Shown here: piece after piece, positions 25,150 to 36,850 of the stretch
Numbering within the stretch: position 1 is the stretch's first letter
Layout of the letters: the number at the start of each line of letters is the position of its first letter
Source: Octopus sinensis
Taxonomy: Eukaryota
Assembly (NCBI RefSeq): GCF_006345805.1
Contig: NC_043002.1
Coordinates: 113,584,001-113,648,000 of the forward strand
Reading direction: 5' to 3'
Length of the DNA: 64,000 nucleotides
Translations under genes and position numbers: made by a program
The notes under the pieces: generated by a model
Seen by the model: the letters and a program-made list of their open reading frames with translations, nothing else
Told to the model about the DNA's origin: nothing
Databases searched by the model: none

Positions 25150-25320
25150 AACAATGGAGTCCTGATCCCAAAGATCAACCATAGATGTGGTCTGACCACT
25201 GGGATCATGTACTTCCTATGGAAGCCCCTCTGGCATCACTGCTCTATCTCCCAAAAGACAATGCTCCACATCTACAACACATTGGTCTTCTTATTTTTCT
25301 TCAATAGAGCCAGAACATGT
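25150..25320 (+). mobile_element. Degenerate RTE-like LINE RT fragment, left part (split by the Gypsy)
   Basis: LHIYNTLV...ARTC joins SLSKT-LVKRINNFDSRALTTINHIR after the insertion, resembling the LYGAETW...LRRI LINE segment. Confidence 0.65.
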
Positions 25321-25590
25321 TGTGGTTGATGAAAGGAGCACAACGGAAACAAGGAAATAGGAAACAGAAGTGCAATAAGGTCTTACCTGACAGGGGATGA
25401 AGTCGGATGGCCTTCAGCCAACTTGCTCGCGTGTTGTCGTCTCGGTGCCTTGCTGGGGTCTCTCGCAGCCGGTCGATGCCGCACGTGCGTTGAGTCTGTC
25501 GCTTCCGCTTCCGCCGGCGCATGCGCCCTGCAAGACCTGTAAGCATCACTTCCGCTCCCGCCCGTCCCGTCACACTCCTTCATCACCACA
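25321..25590 (-). repeat. 3' LTR
   Basis: Direct repeat of 29302-29571, preceded on the element strand by the PPT. Confidence 0.97.
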
Positions 25591-25592
25591 CG

Positions 25593-25599
25593 CCCCCCT
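25593..25599 (-). other. Polypurine tract AGGGGGG
   Basis: Lies 2 nt (CG) upstream of the 3' LTR TG. Confidence 0.85.
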
Positions 25600-25626
25600 G
25601 ATCTATAAATCACTGAACCGGCTTCC

Positions 25627-28547
25627 TCACTCGCTCCCGCACCCGAAACTGGTTTCATAATCAGCCAGCCAGGGAGGAGGGTGCCGCTCCCTCTGTGGTC
25701 GCTGCGCGACCCTAGGACTTGTTTCTGGTGTGTTGCTGTCGACCTCGTCATCCTGTCGGTTGTTTTCGTCCTGCCCACTGTTGCTTGTCCCATCCTCTGG
25801 GGCATGGACAATCCTCCGTATGTCCAAAACGTGGCGTGGCATACCATCGATGGAGATGTTATTCTTCGAACTTACGGAGGTTATTGTCCCCTTTCCCCAT
25901 TGCGATGTACACCGTGCGTTTGGGGGTTTTACCCAGACTTCCTCCCCAACCCGCACGAAGGCGTGCTCTTCCTCTGCCCCGGGTTGCATTGATTTAGTAC
26001 ACGGATGCCTCCACTCGTACCTGAATATTGCTCTGTGTGGCACCGATTCCTCAGCCTGTCCGGATCGGGGAGACAAGTTGTACCAAAAAACTGCTTCAAG
26101 CGGCGAAATGTGCCCTCTTTCCGCTATGGCCTTGACTGTCCGATGGTGCCTCTCCACGATCCCGTTACCGCCCGGCCTATACGCTGCTCTGAACAAGCGT
26201 CGCACGTTCCACCGATCAAGCATAGCCCTCAGTGCTTCCGAACGAAATGCCGCCCCGTTGTCCATCAGTAGTTCTTCCACGGGACCTCTCTCTAAAAATA
26301 TCCCGTTCAGGATCTGCACGATCTCGTCAGCAATGCCCGATCTCAACTCCCTCCAAATGGCCAGCCGGCCCGGCCCACAGTCGACCATGGAGAGGTACAT
26401 TCGCTGACGGTAGTGTGTCACATCCACAGCTAGCCTTTTCCAGTTCTGCTCCACGGAAAGGCTTCCCTGTTCATGCCCACACGGAGCAGGGTCGATGGAC
26501 TGACACCTGTCGCAGCTCCCGACCACCTTCCGGACGCTTCTCCTGGTCACGTCAGCATCAATCTTTTTTGCCAGATACAGGGTCCTGTCCACACCCAGGT
26601 GATGCATAGCGTGCAATTTCTTCAGCTCGGAGTCATCCAACCGACACGCCGCAGCTATCCCTCTCCGCGCCTCCTCCGGTTCTTCCAACCACGCCCTTTT
26701 CACCCTGGTCAGTACGTCCGCCTTGTTTTTCTCCGAAGGCACGAAGACCACGTTCAGCTTGAGTCCGAATTCGGCGATCAGTTCACCTAGAACTCCTAGA
26801 CGGCGCTTCACTAACATCTCCGCAGCACCTTTCGTCCGCACTCTCCTGTCACCGGTGATCACTGATCCTACCCAGGCAAGCACAGTGGCCGAATCCGTCC
26901 GCATTTCAATCGTGCGCAGCCCCCATTTCAAGGCCAAGTTCACCCCTTTCAGCAGCGCGTCTAGTTCGGCGACATTGATGTGGTTGAAATCATCTGCTTT
27001 CCGAAGCCAGGACGCGTCCTCCACCGCAGTGCCTTCGATTGCCAACACCACCCCTATCGCTATACTGCTAGCATCACACCAGACAGTCCCGCATTTCGTC
27101 CTGGGCACGTACCAGTTCCCCCTGACCGAGTCTTCCGCTCTTGTCCTCTCTAGGATCTCCTGCATCATCGCCACCGTCCCTTCTCCCACCTTGTCGCCCC
27201 ACCTCTCTCCTTCTGCTCATCTCTTGGTGTAACTACACGCCGTGCGCAGCCATCCAGCGATCGGGTAGTGACCGACCAACTTCCCACACACCGAGAACAG
27301 CTCTCTCCTGCTGACGCTGGAACTCAGCTCTGGGATTTCATTTCCTCTCCGGAACACCAATTCACCTGATCTATCTCTTCGCAGCTTCAGCCCCAGCGCG
27401 GCTCCCCCTTCAATCGACTCCGGCGGCTTAGCAATCAGTCCGAACTTCTCCAGATGTCTCACTACCTCGTCGGCTGCCACTACAGTTTCGTCCACCAAAA
27501 TGTCGTCAATGTAGGAGCTGGTGGCCTTTCTAATCTTGCCGTCTTTCCCTAGGACGGACCTAAGCACTGCCGACATGATCTTCGGAGCAGAATTCAGCCC
27601 GAAACCCAGCCTGGTTAGACAGTACGTCCGGCCCTTGTACCGCACCAGCTGATATCGCCATAGTTTGTCGCTCACATGGAGCTGCAAGTATGCCGATCTC
27701 AAGTCGACAATCGTCGCTGCCTCAGTCGACTGTCTCCACTTGCGTAATGCCTCACCACAAACGTCTGTCGCCTCACCTCCCGTGTGACACGATATGTGCT
27801 GGTTTAACTCCCTGAAGTCCAGCACCGGTCTGACTTTTCCCTTCGTAGGCTGCACCACCGCCATCAGGGGTAGCACTCCGCCCGCTACCTCCTCCTTCCA
27901 AGGGACAAGGATCCCTTCCTCGATCCACCTCTCCACCTCGTCTTCAACTCAACCCTGGCGTGGCCTTTCAGAGTATGCTGGTAACAGCTCACCCTGTTCT
28001 CCAGTGTCGGGGGCTCGTCCTTCCATTTCCACTCTATCGTCCACCGCTGACCATCGAACGCCGCCTGAAAGTCCTTGTCCTCGATGGTGTAAGCGGCGCC
28101 GTCCCTCGCGGGGCTCTGCTCCCTCTGGTGATCCTGACTCACAGTGCACGACGCCCCCACGCTTCCGAACGTGACCTTATTTCCCACAACGCTGACACCA
28201 CCGAGGCAGTTGATGGCGTCCATCCCCATCACCACATCAACTCCATTTATCACGCGTTCGGCCACAATTGCCTGTAGCCTTAGCATCGCGCCGCGCACCA
28301 CTATCTCCACCGTGCTGCTGCCTCTGCAACGGATTTCGCTGCCGTCGACCGCCCGGACACTACACACCCCGTTCCATTCCTTCGTCGCCCTCGAAGTCAC
28401 CAGGGTGGTCGTACAGCCCGTATCCACAAGGGCCTTGAACGTCTCCCCCTCGGCCTCCACGTCAATCACTGGCAGTGTCTCCAATAGCGCCTCTACTCGT
28501 TTGAGGGGAAAGTTCGAGAGGCAGCAACTTCCCCGCGGTCGTTTCCC
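25627..28547 (-). pseudogene. pol: Gypsy Pol (PR-RT-RNase H-integrase), with a 1-nt deletion near 27946 and an in-frame TGA at 27217-27219
   Basis: Motifs: PR LVDTG; RT YIDD; RH WCDASS/AELDA/TDS; INT HH-CC, AVDVTH, LMDNG, VERHHR. No chromodomain seen. Confidence 0.93.
28489..28547 (-). promoter_or_regulatory. -1 ribosomal frameshift signal: G GGA AAC, 6-nt spacer, predicted H-type pseudoknot
   Basis: The heptamer is in the gag phase, and the -1 frame continues into the protease. S1 GGGGAAGTT/AACTTTCCCC, S2 GCCTCT/AGAGGC. Confidence 0.8.
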
Positions 28548-29257
28548 TGGCCGCAATCACGGGCAATGTGCCCTGTCTGCCTGCATCGATAGCAAACTGG
28601 CCCCAGCTGCGTACAGTCCCGCGCCATGTGCGGTCCCTGGCATTTAAAACATCGTCCTGAGAACGGCCGCTCTCGTTGCACGGTGGGCTTCCGTACCTCT
28701 TTCTCGGGACGTCGTCCGTCTTTACGCGCCTCCGTCACCGCCATCGCTATCCCCTTCCGCCCCGAGTGTCTCGTCAACCCGCGAGCATGAGTTACAAGCT
28801 CGCTCAATGGCATCTTTTTGACCCTGGGCAGTTGTTGTAGGTGAATCCCTACGTCATCGGGGAAGCCATTTACGAATGCCAGTCGGGCTGCTCTCTCCAG
28901 TCCTTCTCCGGCAAACCCGGCCAGAGTCGCTAGCCTTCTAGCTTCCGCCGCAAAATCATCCACCTGGCCTCCCGTCCACCTGATTGCACCCAGCTTAGCG
29001 AAAGCTGTGTACTCGCATTCCGTGTATGCGTCACACAAGCGCCGCTCTATATTCCCATCGCAGAGCCGTTCTTTTTCGTCCATTTCTAGGTAGAGCGACA
29101 ACGCACTTCCTTCCAAATACAGGGCCATAAGACTCGCCACGTCGCTTATGCCCTGCAGTCTCGCCACCAGCCTGATTTTCTGAATCCAGGCCACTACATC
29201 GCCTTCGCCGTTAAAAGGTCTGACGACGTCACTGGCGATCCTAATTTTTGCCGACAT
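28493..29257 (-). CDS. gag: Gypsy Gag (254 aa, MSAKIRIASDVVRPFNGEGDVVAW...), intact
   Basis: Open frame from ATG 29257 to TAG 28493. C-terminal zinc knuckles CFKCQGPHMARDC and CYRCRQTGHIARDC. Confidence 0.93.
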   Translation of the reverse strand: MSAKIRIASDVVRPFNGEGDVVAWIQKIRLVARLQGISDVASLMALYLEGSALSLYLEMDEKERLCDGNIERRLCDAYTECEYTAFAKLGAIRWTGGQVDDFAAEARRLATLAGFAGEGLERAARLAFVNGFPDDVGIHLQQLPRVKKMPLSELVTHARGLTRHSGRKGIAMAVTEARKDGRRPEKEVRKPTVQRERPFSGRCFKCQGPHMARDCTQLGPVCYRCRQTGHIARDCGQGNDRGEVAASRTFPSNE

Positions 29258-29289
29258 TGTGTTGAAAAAAATGTGAACGCTGACTAAAT

Positions 29290-29301
29290 GCCGAAATAGC
29301 T
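29290..29301 (-). other. Candidate primer-binding site AGCTATTTCGGC, complementary to nt 1-12 of tRNA-Phe(GAA)
   Basis: Directly follows the 5' LTR CA and lacks TGG. The + strand reads GCCGAAATAGCT, the 5' end of human/Drosophila tRNA-Phe. Confidence 0.75.
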
Positions 29302-29571
29302 TGTGGTTGATGAAAGGAGCACAACGGAAACAAGGAAATAGGAAACAGAAGTGCAATAAGGTCTTACCTGACAGGGGATGAAGTCGGATGGCCTTCAGCC
29401 AACTTGCTCGCGTGTTGTCGTCTCGGTGCCTTGCTGGGGTCTCTCGCAGCCGGTCGATGCCGCACGTGCGTTGAGTCTGTCGCTTCCGCTTCCGCCGGTG
29501 CATGCACCCTGCAAGACCTGTAAGCATCACTTCCGCTCCCGCCCGTCCCGTCACACTCCTTCATCACCACA
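29302..29571 (-). repeat. 5' LTR
   Basis: 268/270 identical to 25321-25590. Terminal inverted repeat TGTGGT(T)GATG. Confidence 0.97.
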
Positions 29572-29576
29572 CCACA

Positions 29577-29660
29577 CATGTTCCCTCTCAAAGACCTGGT
29601 AAAGAGGATCAACAACTTTGATAGCAGAGCCTTGACAACCATCAATCACATCAGATAGTT
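29577..29660 (+). mobile_element. Degenerate RTE-like LINE fragment, right part
   Basis: Continues 25150-25320 across the CATGT TSD. Confidence 0.65.
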
Positions 29661-30280: not shown

Positions 30281-30592
30281 TAGAGCCCACATTCCTTATA
30301 TTCAGAGAACTTAAATTATGGAGTATATGGATCCCAAATTCGAAACTATTGAAGAGAACAAGGAATTTTTTTTTTATATTTTATGCCTGATCACCGGTCA
30401 TCATCATTTGTTATTTTTGAAATGTGTACATATCCACTGAAATGGTTACTGGTCTGAGGTCTACACTGGGTTTATTATCAACAAGTGATAAATGTGGTAT
30501 TAAGAATAGTGGAATAAGTGAAGACAAGGCTATGATAATATTCTAGATGAATGATAAATCTGAGCCAAAGCAGTACCATTTGAGCATATAAG

Positions 30593-30641
<49 letters not shown>

Positions 30642-30659
30642 TATATATAAGAATATATA

Positions 30660-30753
<94 letters not shown>

Positions 30754-31087
30754 ATATATATGTATGTATGTATGTAAGTATATATGTATGTATGTATATA
30801 TATAAATAAATAAATGGAGTTTAAAGCAGGTATAAATGAAATACTTTTACTTTCGACACATGCTTCAAAGATTTCACTGATATTATTCAAAAGAATAAAT
30901 GGTATAAAACAATGCAATCTTCTCTTCGGGAAAGTGAAAAAAACGAAAAACTCATCAATAAGACATTTTAACAAAAAATGATGGATATGTGGATATGCAT
31001 AGTGATTTACTGAACACTGTTAATATTGTTTGAAGAAACATTATATTTTTACCGTGTTAATTGTTAACAAGGCAAAAAAATACACTC

Positions 31088-31120
<33 letters not shown>

Positions 31121-32731
31121 CCGTAAAAACCCATGTAATAATTTATGCACTTCTTTTCATAAATATGAAAATAAACTTTAAAGAGGGTGTAAATTACATG
31201 AGTCGATCATTTCCAGAATTTTTTTTTTGTTGAAAAAGATGTACAAAATATAAGTTGACTCATTTGATGAACTTAGATAAATTGAAGTTGACTTTTATTT
31301 ATGCTGGACGGTGTAATGCTTACTTTTTCTAAAATCATTAAAATCATTAAATGGTTAACTACTTTTTGAAGTCTGACTTACACATTGGCAATCATGGCCG
31401 TGGCCATAATTTGCATATTTTACTTGGATGACTAAAGAGTCGTCCCAACTGATGTTAATAAACTGATTTACAAAACCTGTGCATATTTATCAGCTTTGTT
31501 TTTGTTGTTGACAATTCTTAACAACTTTTCCTGTGTACATACGTCTATGAGTGTATCATCATCATCATCATCATCATTTAGCGTCCGTTTTCCATGCTAG
31601 CATGGGTTGGACGGTTTAACTGGGGTCTGTGAAGCCGGAAGGCTTCATCAGGCCCAGTCAGATTTGGCAGTGTTTCTACGGCTGGATGCCCTTCCTAACG
31701 CCAACCACTCCGCGAGTGTAGTGGGTGTTTTTTACGTGCCACCTGGACAGGTGCCAGACAGAGCTGGCGAACGGCCACGAACGGATGGTGTTTTTACGTG
31801 TCACCGGCACGGGGCCAGGCAATGCTGGCAACGGACACGAACGGATGGTGCTTTTACGTGCCACCGACATGGGGCCAGACAGAGAGAGAAAGAGAAGCAC
31901 ACATGTATATACACATTATATATATATATAATATACCGTAAAAACCCATGTAATAATTTATGCACTTCTTTTCATAAATATGAAAATAAACTTTAAAGAG
32001 GGTGTAAATTACATGAGTCGATCATTTCCAGAATTTTTTTTTTGTTGAAAAAGATGTACAAAATATAAGTTGACTCATTTGATGAACTTAGATAAATTGA
32101 AGTTGACTTTTATTTATGCTGGACGGTGTAATGCTTACTTTTTCTAAAATCATTAAAATCATTAAATGGTTAACTACTTTTTGAAGTCTGACTTACACAT
32201 TGGCAATCATGGCCGTGGCCATAATTTGCATATTTTACTTGGATGACTAAAGAGTCGTCCCAACTGATGTTAATAAACTTGATTTACAAAACCTGTGCAT
32301 ATTTATCAGCTTTGTTTTTGTTGTTGACAATTCTTAACAACTTTTCCTGTGTACATACGTCTATGAGTGTATCATCATCATCATCATCATCATTTAGCGT
32401 CCGTTTTCCATGCTAGCATGGGTTGGACGGTTTAACTGGGGTCTGTGAAGCCGGAAGGCTTCATCAGGCCCAGTCAGATTTGGCAGTGTTTCTACGGCTG
32501 GATGCCCTTCCTAACGCCAACCACTCCGCGAGTGTAGTGGGTGTTTTTTACGTGCCACCTGGACAGGTGCCAGACAGAGCTGGCGAACGGCCACGAACGG
32601 ATGGTGTTTTTACGTGTCACCGGCACGGGGCCAGGCAATGCTGGCAACGGACACGAACGGATGGTGCTTTTACGTGCCACCGACATGGGGCCAGACAGAG
32701 AGAGAAAGAGAAGCACACATGTATATACACA
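31121..32731. repeat. Tandem duplication of about 795 bp (31121-31915 / 31936-32731)
   Basis: Essentially identical, with one 1-nt indel noted. Junctions lie in (TA)n. Confidence 0.92.
31557..31885 (-). mobile_element. RTE 3'-UTR copy (duplicated at 32371-32700)
   Basis: Same module with internal tandem units. Confidence 0.85.

Positions 32732-36224: not shown

Positions 36225-36850
<626 letters not shown>

What the first reader, a model, noticed from the sequence alone, without database searches (positions are those of the whole stretch)
29290..29301. Gypsy primer-binding site matches the 5' end (nt 1-12) of tRNA-Phe, not a tRNA 3' end
Seen: the 5' LTR's terminal CA is followed directly by AGCTATTTCGGC, with no TGG. 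Its complement GCCGAAATAGCT is not found in the LTR, so Tf1-type self-priming is not supported. Known: human and Drosophila cytosolic tRNA-Phe begins GCCGAAATAGCTCAG. Canonical PBSs pair with the 3' CCA end; copia and Ty5 use tRNAiMet halves cut near the anticodon; Tf1 uses an 11-nt piece cut from its own 5' end. Inference: minus-strand synthesis is primed by a 10-12-nt 5' fragment of tRNA-Phe, or by tRNA-Phe cleaved in the D-stem after annealing, i.e. a trans version of Tf1 priming. The match starts exactly at tRNA nt 1 and has the right polarity. I do not recall this priming mode being described, but I cannot check the literature.
Basis: partly seen in the sequence, partly recalled or inferred. 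Interest (0 to 1): 0.8.

Follow-up and report, generated by a model that had tools for sequence, protein, structure and literature searches.

The report
Retrotransposon primer site matching tRNA-Phe 5' end
A small retrovirus-like jumping gene in this octopus-like genome, and all its relatives found in other invertebrates, carries next to its first repeat a 12-letter site that pairs with the first 12 letters of the host's phenylalanine tRNA rather than with a tRNA tail, which points to a way of starting DNA copying that I could not find described.

Summary
On the minus strand a 4.25-kb LTR retrotransposon (LTRs 269/271 identical, 5-bp target duplication CATGT) has AGCTATTTCGGC (29301..29290) directly after the 5' LTR's terminal CA and 32 nt before the gag ATG. 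This is the exact complement of nt 1-12 of human and Drosophila tRNA-Phe.

It is a trait of the whole family. About 35 metagenomic relatives (37-56% Pol identity) and 7 further genomic copies from 6 animal species carry AGCTAT-NNN-GGC at the same place, while the flanking sequence is unconserved. The pattern occurs 45 times on the sense strand and 0 times on the antisense strand (0.7 expected).

Only tRNA positions 4-6, in the acceptor stem, vary. The variant follows the host clade: two unrelated element lineages in malacostracan crustaceans share GCCUAGAUAGCU. No LTR contains the complement, so Tf1-type self-priming is excluded. No extra tRNA complementarity exists.

Best reading: minus-strand synthesis is primed by the 5'-terminal 12 nt of tRNA-Phe, probably cut after annealing, a trans analogue of Tf1. 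The priming chemistry is inferred.

The "Gypsy" label is not established. The open literature searched holds no description of this mode.

The parts
29577..29581 (.). Target-site duplication, copy next to the 5' LTR (CATGT on the + strand)
   Evidence: Same 5-mer as 25316-25320. 5-bp duplications also flank the relatives in Argonauta, Oratosquilla, Aplysia and Macrosteles.
29302..29576 (-). 5' LTR: 270 nt plus an extra 5-nt TGTGG at its outer end (29572-29576). Reads TGTGGTGATGA...TCATCAACCACA.
   Evidence: 269/271 identical to the 3' LTR. Terminal inverted repeat and TG..CA ends.
29290..29301 (-). Putative primer-binding site AGCTATTTCGGC, the exact complement of tRNA-Phe nt 1-12 (GCCGAAAUAGCU)
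   Evidence: Conserved at this position across the family. Predicted 12-bp duplex of -18.7 kcal/mol.
29258..29289 (-). Short untranslated leader between the site and the gag ATG
   Evidence: The leader is 0-43 nt in most relatives and is not conserved.
28493..29257 (-). gag (254 aa, MSAKIRIASD..., two CCHC zinc knuckles)
   Evidence: ORF; Pfam zf-CCHC, 2.6e-9.
27885..28556 (-). Protease ORF, in a different frame from gag
   Evidence: gag-asp_proteas/RVP, weak. The frame changes between PR and RT near 27940, where relatives are continuous, so this is one frameshift in this copy.
27217..27936 (-). Reverse transcriptase plus the start of DUF7047, ended by an in-frame stop at 27217-27219
   Evidence: RVT_1 4.6e-5, DUF7047 8e-16; same frame as the next ORF, and relatives read through.
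25627..27189 (-). RNase H (RVT_3/RNase_H type) and integrase (HHCC zinc site, DDE core)
   Evidence: Invariant D39/E75/D99/D158 (RNase H) and H193/H197/C226/C229, D256/D310/E346 (integrase) in 22 relatives.
25591..25603 (-). Polypurine tract GATCAGGGGGGCG, directly upstream of the 3' LTR
   Evidence: The same GATCA-G-run motif occurs in the relatives.
25321..25590 (-). 3' LTR (270 nt)
25316..25320 (.). Target-site duplication, copy next to the 3' LTR (CATGT on the + strand)

Best explanation
The 12 nt directly after the 5' LTR are the minus-strand primer-binding site of a compact (about 4-4.5 kb) LTR retrotransposon lineage that is widespread in invertebrates.

The site pairs with the 5'-terminal 12 nt of host cytosolic tRNA-Phe (GCCGAAAUAGCU in most animals). 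The primer's 3'-OH must therefore be U12 of the tRNA. The tRNA has to be cut between U12 and C13, in the D-stem. This could happen before annealing (a very short 5' tRNA fragment). More likely it happens after annealing, by the element's own RNase H at the end of the 12-bp RNA duplex, as Tf1 does with the first 11 nt of its own transcript.

Extension from U12 copies U5-R. Later, plus-strand strong-stop synthesis copies the 12-nt RNA primer up to its 5' end (tRNA nt 1). That would regenerate the site from the host tRNA in each cycle. It would explain why conservation stops exactly at tRNA nt 1 and why the site follows the host.

Shown: position, polarity, exact complementarity, family-wide conservation, restriction of variation to tRNA positions 4-6, host-clade tracking, and absence of a cis primer.

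Inferred: that tRNA-Phe is the RNA used in every host, the cleavage step and its enzyme, and re-templating of the site.
For: 1. Position and polarity. The site abuts the LTR end defined by the second LTR and by 5-bp target duplications in the window and in Argonauta, Aplysia, Oratosquilla and Macrosteles. In Amphibalanus and Portunus the LTR end is set by the second LTR copy alone. The tRNA's nt 12 pairs with the first base after U5, which is the geometry needed for priming.

2. Identity. Human and Drosophila tRNA-Phe start GCCGAAATAGCTCAG.

3. Conservation. AGCTAT-NN-CGGC follows the LTR in about 35 distinct metagenomic elements whose Pol is only 37-56% identical to the window's. The LTR and leader show no conservation. 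Every locus that contains the gag start has the site. There are 45 sense-strand matches, 0 antisense, and 0.7 expected.

4. Pattern of variation. Only the bases opposite tRNA nt 4-6 vary (TT, CG, CA, CC, and CTA for nt 4-6). The bases opposite nt 1-3 and 7-12 are constant. In eukaryote-type tRNA-Phe genes TAGCT (nt 8-12) is invariant and the acceptor stem varies.

5. Host tracking. Oratosquilla (2 copies) and Portunus elements share AGCTATCTAGGC, although they do not group together in the Pol tree (1% bootstrap; Oratosquilla groups with the cephalopod copies at 72%). The CC variant occurs in two distant lineages from the same sample series. A eukaryote-type tRNA-Phe(GAA) gene starting GCCTAGATAGCT exists (L105).

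6. No cis primer. The best complement in 450 nt upstream has 3-5 mismatches in every locus, as in shuffles. None lies elsewhere in the element.

7. The RNase H catalytic residues are invariant in the family. The 12-bp duplexes are stable, at -18.7 to -23.5 kcal/mol. The length is comparable to the 11-nt Tf1 primer, by my own knowledge. The open papers I read confirm only that Tf1-type elements self-prime from the first nucleotides of their own mRNA and that a cleavage is needed, and they cite Levin 1995 and 1996 for it (PMC4600332; PMC5445492).
Against: - There is no biochemical evidence of any kind.
- The host's own tRNA-Phe gene was not available: the window and the cephalopod loci hold no tRNA-Phe gene.
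- tRNA-Phe genes starting GCCGCGA, GCCGTGA or GCCGGGA were not found in the only collection I could scan. Malacostracan tRNA-Phe was not seen either.
- In bacteria and phages, tRNAs starting GCCGNNATAGCT are mostly tRNA-Thr. The 12-mer alone does not fix the isotype outside animals.
- A cut inside the D-stem after nt 12 is not a known tRNA processing site. Known 5' tRNA fragments are 14 nt or longer (own knowledge).
- No second contact with the tRNA was found.
- The window copy itself is dead: one frameshift and one stop in pol.
Confidence: 0.75

Rival explanations
1. The primer is another small host RNA that carries GCCGNNAUAGCU, not tRNA-Phe. Candidates are a different tRNA isoacceptor in some hosts, or a tRNA-derived or SINE-like Pol III transcript. 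The match to tRNA-Phe would then hold only for part of the family.
For: The variants GCCGCGA, GCCGTGA and GCCGGGA were not seen in any tRNA-Phe gene I could inspect. In bacterial and phage contigs such 5' ends belong mostly to tRNA-Thr. The 12-mer includes the start of the generic A-box (TAGCT), which many tRNAs share.
Against: For the commonest variant the match to documented animal tRNA-Phe is exact over all 12 nt. It is found in copies from the window, Argonauta, Aplysia, an insect and a barnacle. The crustacean variant equals the start of a real eukaryote-type tRNA-Phe(GAA) gene. To my knowledge no other animal cytosolic tRNA starts GCCGAAAUAGCU.
Confidence: 0.12
2. The 12-mer is a conserved cis-acting signal with another role, such as packaging, dimerisation, translation start or an integrase contact. 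Its identity to the complement of the tRNA-Phe 5' end would be coincidental or mimicry without priming. The true primer would bind elsewhere or be unconventional.
For: No experiment links the site to priming. No other candidate primer site was looked for beyond the absence of a TGG motif after the LTR.
Against: - The site sits exactly where primer-binding sites sit and starts at the first base after the LTR in every copy.
- Conservation ends abruptly at the base opposite tRNA nt 1.
- Variation is confined to the tRNA's variable acceptor-stem positions and follows the host clade, not the element tree. A purely element-encoded signal has no reason to behave that way.
- The chance of an exact 12-nt match to the start of any of about 50 tRNA species is about 3e-6 (arithmetic).
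- It lies outside the LTR, so it is not part of the integrated DNA end.
Confidence: 0.08
3. [quoted passage not shown]
For: The site is short (12 nt), lacks TGG and abuts the LTR, as in Tf1/Tj1 (PMC4600332).
Against: The complement is absent from the window's LTR and from the whole element. In about 38 related loci the best match in the 450 nt upstream has 3-5 mismatches, the same as shuffled sequence. The LTRs are not conserved among relatives, while the site is.
Confidence: 0.02
4. Chance or decay: a degenerate canonical primer site that happens to resemble the tRNA-Phe 5' end in this one dead copy.
For: The window copy is inactive, with one frameshift and one stop in pol.
Against: Family-wide conservation includes copies with 99-100% identical LTRs (Argonauta, Amphibalanus). 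Matches are 45 sense against 0 antisense, with 0.7 expected.
Confidence: 0.01

Closest known systems
Tf1/Tf2/Tj1-type self-priming (fission-yeast Ty3/gypsy-like elements and the sushi group)
   Same: A short primer-binding site (11 nt in Tf1, 12 nt here) directly after the 5' LTR, with no TGG. The primer is the 5'-terminal 11-12 nt of a longer RNA. That RNA must be cut at the end of the RNA duplex to create the 3'-OH. In Tf1 this cut needs the element's RNase H (Levin 1995 and 1996, cited in PMC4600332).
   Different: Here the complementary RNA is not the element's own transcript. It is a host tRNA, so the reaction would be in trans. The RNase H domain is of a different Pfam type (RVT_3/RNase_H). 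The site varies with the host, not with the LTR.
copia / 1731 / Ty5 and Candida Tca-type priming by a 5' tRNA fragment ('half-tRNA')
   Same: The primer is a 5' piece of a host tRNA made by an internal cut, not the CCA end (own knowledge; an internal-region primer site is mentioned in PMC5445492).
   Different: Those sites pair with the anticodon stem-loop region (about nt 25-39) of tRNA-iMet or tRNA-Arg, and the fragment is about 39 nt long. Here the pairing is with nt 1-12 of tRNA-Phe. The cut would be in the D-stem and would give a 12-nt primer.
Canonical tRNA-Phe primer-binding site (for example mouse IAP elements and some gammaretrovirus-like ERVs)
   Same: The same host tRNA species is used as the source of the primer.
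   Different: The canonical site is TGGTGCCGAAA..., complementary to the 3' 18 nt including CCA. The present site has the opposite sense relative to the acceptor stem and pairs with the 5' strand.
5' tRNA fragments that match primer sites through acceptor-stem symmetry (for example Arabidopsis tRF31-Asp2, PMC11962134)
   Same: A tRNA 5' end and a retrotransposon primer-binding site are related in sequence.
   Different: There the 5' fragment is homologous to a canonical 3'-end site and is proposed to bind DNA or chromatin for regulation. Here the RNA-sense site is complementary to the tRNA 5' end itself, including nt 8-12, which lie outside the acceptor stem.

Membership tests
Minus-strand primer-binding site of an LTR retroelement | Lies within 0-5 nt downstream of the 5' LTR, upstream of gag, on the sense strand | tested here: met
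   There are 0 nt after the LTR end in the window, in 7 other genomic copies and in about 35 metagenomic elements.
Minus-strand primer-binding site of an LTR retroelement | Complementary to a host tRNA, and conserved among relatives while the flanks diverge | tested here: met
   Exact complement of tRNA-Phe nt 1-12. Conservation profile. Counts.
Minus-strand primer-binding site of an LTR retroelement | Starts with TGG and pairs with the tRNA's 3' CCA end (canonical form) | tested here: not met
   The site starts AGC in all copies. No copy has TGG at the junction.
Tf1-type self-priming elements | Primer site complementary to the first ~11 nt of the element's own transcript (inside the 5' LTR) | tested here: not met
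   The best match in 450 nt upstream has 3-5 mismatches in all loci, equal to shuffles. No match elsewhere in the element.
Tf1-type self-priming elements | RNase H-dependent cut at the end of the RNA duplex creates the primer | not testable with these tools
   Only the invariance of the RNase H D-E-D-D residues can be shown.
copia/Ty5-type half-tRNA priming | Site complementary to the anticodon stem-loop region of tRNA-iMet (or another tRNA) | tested here: not met
   Complementarity is to nt 1-12 only. There is no complementarity above chance to nt 13-73 within 100 nt either side.
Ty3/gypsy (Metaviridae) | Domain order PR-RT-RNase H-IN | tested here: met
Ty3/gypsy (Metaviridae) | Gypsy-type RNase H (Pfam RT_RNaseH / RT_RNaseH_2) fused to RT | tested here: not met
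   0 of 22 members hit these models. Instead they hit DUF7047 (21/22) followed by RVT_3 (19/22) or RNase_H PF00075 (6/22).
Ty3/gypsy (Metaviridae) | RT and IN closest to Ty3/gypsy references | tested here: inconclusive
   Profile against PDB: the best RT hit is Ty3 (6e-9), barely ahead of HIV-2 (5e-8). The best IN hit is MMTV (7e-16). The only match to the Ty3 polyprotein entry (7q5b) is over its RT region, so its IN scored below the retroviral integrases. No reference phylogeny was possible.
BEL/Pao (Belpaoviridae) | Pfam hallmarks Peptidase_A17, DUF1758/DUF1759, DUF5641 | tested here: not met
   None hit in 22 members or in the window's four ORFs.

The most novel reading that the evidence does not exclude
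A whole lineage of compact LTR retroelements, found here in molluscs, crustaceans and an insect and in aquatic and soil metagenomes, starts reverse transcription from the 5'-terminal 12 nt of host tRNA-Phe. The primer is released by a cut after U12 on the annealed tRNA, a trans form of Tf1 self-priming. The site is rewritten from the host tRNA in each cycle, so it adapts to the acceptor-stem sequence of each host clade. This would be a fourth mode of LTR-retroelement priming, beside the tRNA 3' end, the internal half-tRNA and self-priming.
Probability: 0.6. Interest if true: 0.85.

Novelty: new variant of a known kind. Interest (0 to 1): 0.8.

Why it matters
Primer choice is one of the few steps at which LTR retroelements and retroviruses depend on a specific host RNA. 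Hosts exploit that step: 3' tRNA fragments silence elements through their primer sites.

A lineage that uses the opposite end of a tRNA would have several consequences:
- It would escape that 3'-fragment control.
- It would show that the Tf1-style "cut a 5'-terminal 11-12-mer at the end of an RNA duplex" reaction can work on a host RNA in trans.
- It would give a simple sequence signature (LTR-CA + AGCTAT...GGC) for annotating this overlooked family, which standard primer-site finders keyed on TGG and tRNA 3' ends will miss.
- It makes a sharp prediction that can be checked at once: malacostracan tRNA-Phe starts GCCUAGAUAGCU.

Tried and rejected
- **Self-priming.** I searched for the complement in the window and in 450 nt upstream of the site in all loci. 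It is absent, so self-priming is rejected.
- **A second tRNA contact.** I looked for complementarity to tRNA-Phe nt 13-73 within 100 nt either side of the site. Nothing exceeded shuffles.
- **tRNA genes near the elements.** ARAGORN found none in the window or in 30 metagenome loci. It found only a tRNA-Val in Oratosquilla locus L066.
- **Known RNA families at the site.** Rfam gave no match.
- **Host tRNA-Phe for the variant sites.** Three IMG/VR scans were run. They gave one eukaryote-type tRNA-Phe starting GCCTAGATAGCT, on a giant-virus-like contig (L105). They gave none for the GCCGCGA, GCCGTGA or GCCGGGA starts. GCCGNNATAGCT starts there are mostly bacterial-type tRNA-Thr, which says nothing about eukaryotic hosts.
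- **Literature.** Searches for the 12-mers found only tRNA-Phe primers and probes. Searches for the priming mode found no prior description. Subscription journals are not covered.
- **Uninformative loci.** L064 (Octopus sinensis) is a truncated copy without an LTR. L275 and L276 (Trinorchestia) are full of Ns. Two look-ups found no record.
- wrote the window element to a scratch file for a blastn. A slicing bug printed long stretches of five 5'-truncated metagenome copies. The scratch files were deleted, and only pieces were handled afterwards.

Full report
**Anatomy of the element.** The finding lies in an LTR retrotransposon on the minus strand of the window.
- Two 270-nt LTRs sit at 29302-29571 and 25321-25590. 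The 5' LTR carries 5 extra nt at its outer end, 29572-29576.
- The LTRs are 269/271 identical. They begin TGTGG and end ACCACA.
- They are flanked by a 5-bp target duplication, CATGT, at 25316-25320 and 29577-29581.
- A polypurine tract, GATCAGGGGGGCG, abuts the 3' LTR.
- Between the LTRs lie gag (two CCHC knuckles), protease, RT, RNase H and integrase, in only 3.7 kb.
- Compared with relatives, pol in this copy has one frameshift near 27940 and one in-frame stop at 27217-27219. The copy is young but dead.

Directly after the 5' LTR's terminal CA comes AGCTATTTCGGC (29301..29290). A 32-nt leader and the gag ATG follow. There is no TGG. The complement, GCCGAAATAGCT, is the documented start of human and Drosophila tRNA-Phe(GAA) (PMC10505166; PMC7038984). 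It occurs nowhere else in the element.

**Relatives.** The RNase H-integrase ORF has hundreds of homologues. They come from cephalopods, gastropods, crustaceans, a sea spider and an insect, and from many 4.0-4.3-kb metagenome contigs.
- I fetched 63 metagenomic loci and genomic copies from Argonauta, Aplysia, Oratosquilla (2 copies), Macrosteles, Amphibalanus and Portunus.
- In the genomic copies the LTR end is defined independently, by the second LTR. In four species it is also defined by a 5-bp target duplication.
- In every one of these, the 12 nt directly after the LTR are AGCTATTTCGGC or AGCTATCTAGGC.
- In the metagenomic loci the same place reads AGCTAT-NN-CGGC, with NN = TT, CG, CA or CC. 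gag starts 0-43 nt later in most.
- Every locus that contains the gag start has the site. Three have 1-2 mismatches at the end distal to the LTR.
- The LTR and the leader are not conserved at all, apart from the terminal ACA. The first six positions of that profile were the search anchor, so their 100% conservation is by construction. The genomic copies with independent LTR boundaries and the gag-anchored loci are the unbiased support.
- Over 366 kb of related loci the pattern occurs 45 times on the sense strand and never on the antisense strand, with 0.7 expected.

**What varies, and with what.** All variation falls on the bases opposite tRNA nt 4-6, in the middle of the acceptor stem. The bases opposite nt 1-3 and 7-12 are constant in nearly all copies; the exceptions are three metagenomic copies with one or two mismatches opposite tRNA nt 1-2.
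- Eukaryote-type tRNA-Phe genes that I could inspect keep TAGCT at nt 8-12 and vary in the stem.
- On a Pol tree the variants are interspersed.
- The clearest case is the crustaceans. Oratosquilla (Stomatopoda) and Portunus (Decapoda) elements share AGCTATCTAGGC. Their Pol proteins are only 55-56% identical to each other.
- The Oratosquilla element is closer to the cephalopod copies (60-63%, grouping at 72% bootstrap). The "malacostracan elements together" split has 1% bootstrap support.
- The barnacle and insect copies have the common TT form.
- A eukaryote-type tRNA-Phe(GAA) gene starting exactly GCCTAGATAGCT exists, on a giant-virus-like contig.
- The site therefore behaves as if it were set by a host RNA, not inherited with the element.

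**Rivals.**
- Tf1-type self-priming is excluded. No LTR holds the complement.
- A second contact with the tRNA is not detectable.
- No Rfam family matches the region.
- A role other than priming cannot be formally excluded. However, it does not explain the position, the sharp end of conservation at tRNA nt 1, or the host tracking.
- Some variants might match a tRNA other than Phe. This stays open, because I could not fetch host tRNA genes. In bacterial and phage DNA such 5' ends are mostly tRNA-Thr.

**Mechanism (inferred).**
- The polarity requires a primer whose 3'-OH is U12 of the tRNA.
- The 12-bp duplexes are stable, at -18.7 to -23.5 kcal/mol.
- The closest precedent is Tf1. There, by my own knowledge, the first 11 nt of the transcript pair with the site and RNase H cuts at the end of the duplex. 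The open papers I read confirm the self-priming and the need for a cleavage, and cite Levin 1995 and 1996 for the rest (PMC4600332; PMC5445492).
- The family's RNase H keeps its catalytic residues.
- Plus-strand strong-stop synthesis would copy the RNA primer to its 5' end. This would explain both the exact 12-nt length of the conserved block and the re-templating of the site from the host tRNA.

**Classification.**
- The family has the architecture PR - RVT_1 - DUF7047 - RNase H (RVT_3/PF00075 type) - H2C2 - rve.
- It has none of the Gypsy-type RNase H, BEL/Pao or Copia hallmark domains.
- Against solved structures, its integrase is nearest to MMTV and other retroviral integrases. Its RT is marginally nearest to Ty3.
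- "Gypsy" is therefore only a loose label.

**Novelty.** Full-text searches of the open literature found no report of a primer-binding site complementary to the 5' terminus of a tRNA. Subscription-only papers could not be searched. I rate this as a new variant of a known kind (host-tRNA priming of LTR retroelements). It has high interest and gives an immediately testable prediction for malacostracan tRNA-Phe.

**Housekeeping.** saved the window element to scratch. One search printed long parts of five truncated metagenome copies through a bug. The files were deleted, and later work used pieces only.

Noticed in passing
family-wide (A1; L001-L068, L272-L274): The family is a compact (3.95-4.54 kb) and apparently unnamed LTR-retroelement lineage. 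It has DUF7047 between RT and a cellular/retroviral-type RNase H, and its integrase is closest to betaretroviral integrases. This arrangement recalls the tether plus newly acquired RNase H of vertebrate retroviruses.
   Followed up: partly
L013, L020, L021, L025, L030 and other ~4.1-4.5 kb metagenome contigs: Many contigs are circularly permuted, in the order RH-IN, PPT, one LTR, the site, gag. This fits either collapsed LTRs in assembly or one-LTR circles.
   Followed up: no
L018:1845-1950: A ~110-nt insert with a tRNA-like T-arm (GGTTCGAACC) and a T-run sits between the site and gag. It is flanked by a repeated GCGGC, like a small SINE or tRNA-pseudogene insertion. ARAGORN calls no tRNA there.
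   Followed up: partly
L066:3095-3167: A tRNA-Val(CAC) gene lies about 200 bp upstream of the Oratosquilla element's 5' LTR. This is a single case, so it is no evidence of tRNA-gene targeting.
   Followed up: no
L105 (IMGVR_UViG_3300046655_000646): An AT-rich, giant-virus-like contig (kinase, cold-shock-like and oxygenase-like ORFs) encodes a eukaryote-type tRNA-Phe(GAA) starting GCCTAGATAGCT.
   Followed up: partly
window 29572-29576: The 5' LTR has an extra TGTGG (ccaca on the + strand) at its outer end compared with the 3' LTR. This is probably replication slippage after insertion.
   Followed up: yes
window 31116-32579: Two pairs of 300-nt direct repeats, 100% identical and spaced 815-816 nt apart, indicate a recent tandem duplication of an ~815-bp unit just beside the element.
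   Followed up: no
window 30584-30831 and 36456-36751: Arrays with an 8-10-nt period (microsatellite-like) are related to each other across 5.8 kb.
   Followed up: no
PPT of window 25591-25603 and of L065-L068, L272: The polypurine tract carries a conserved GATCA + G-run motif across phyla: GATCAGGGGGGCG, GATCACGGGGGCG, GATCAAGGGTGTG.
   Followed up: no
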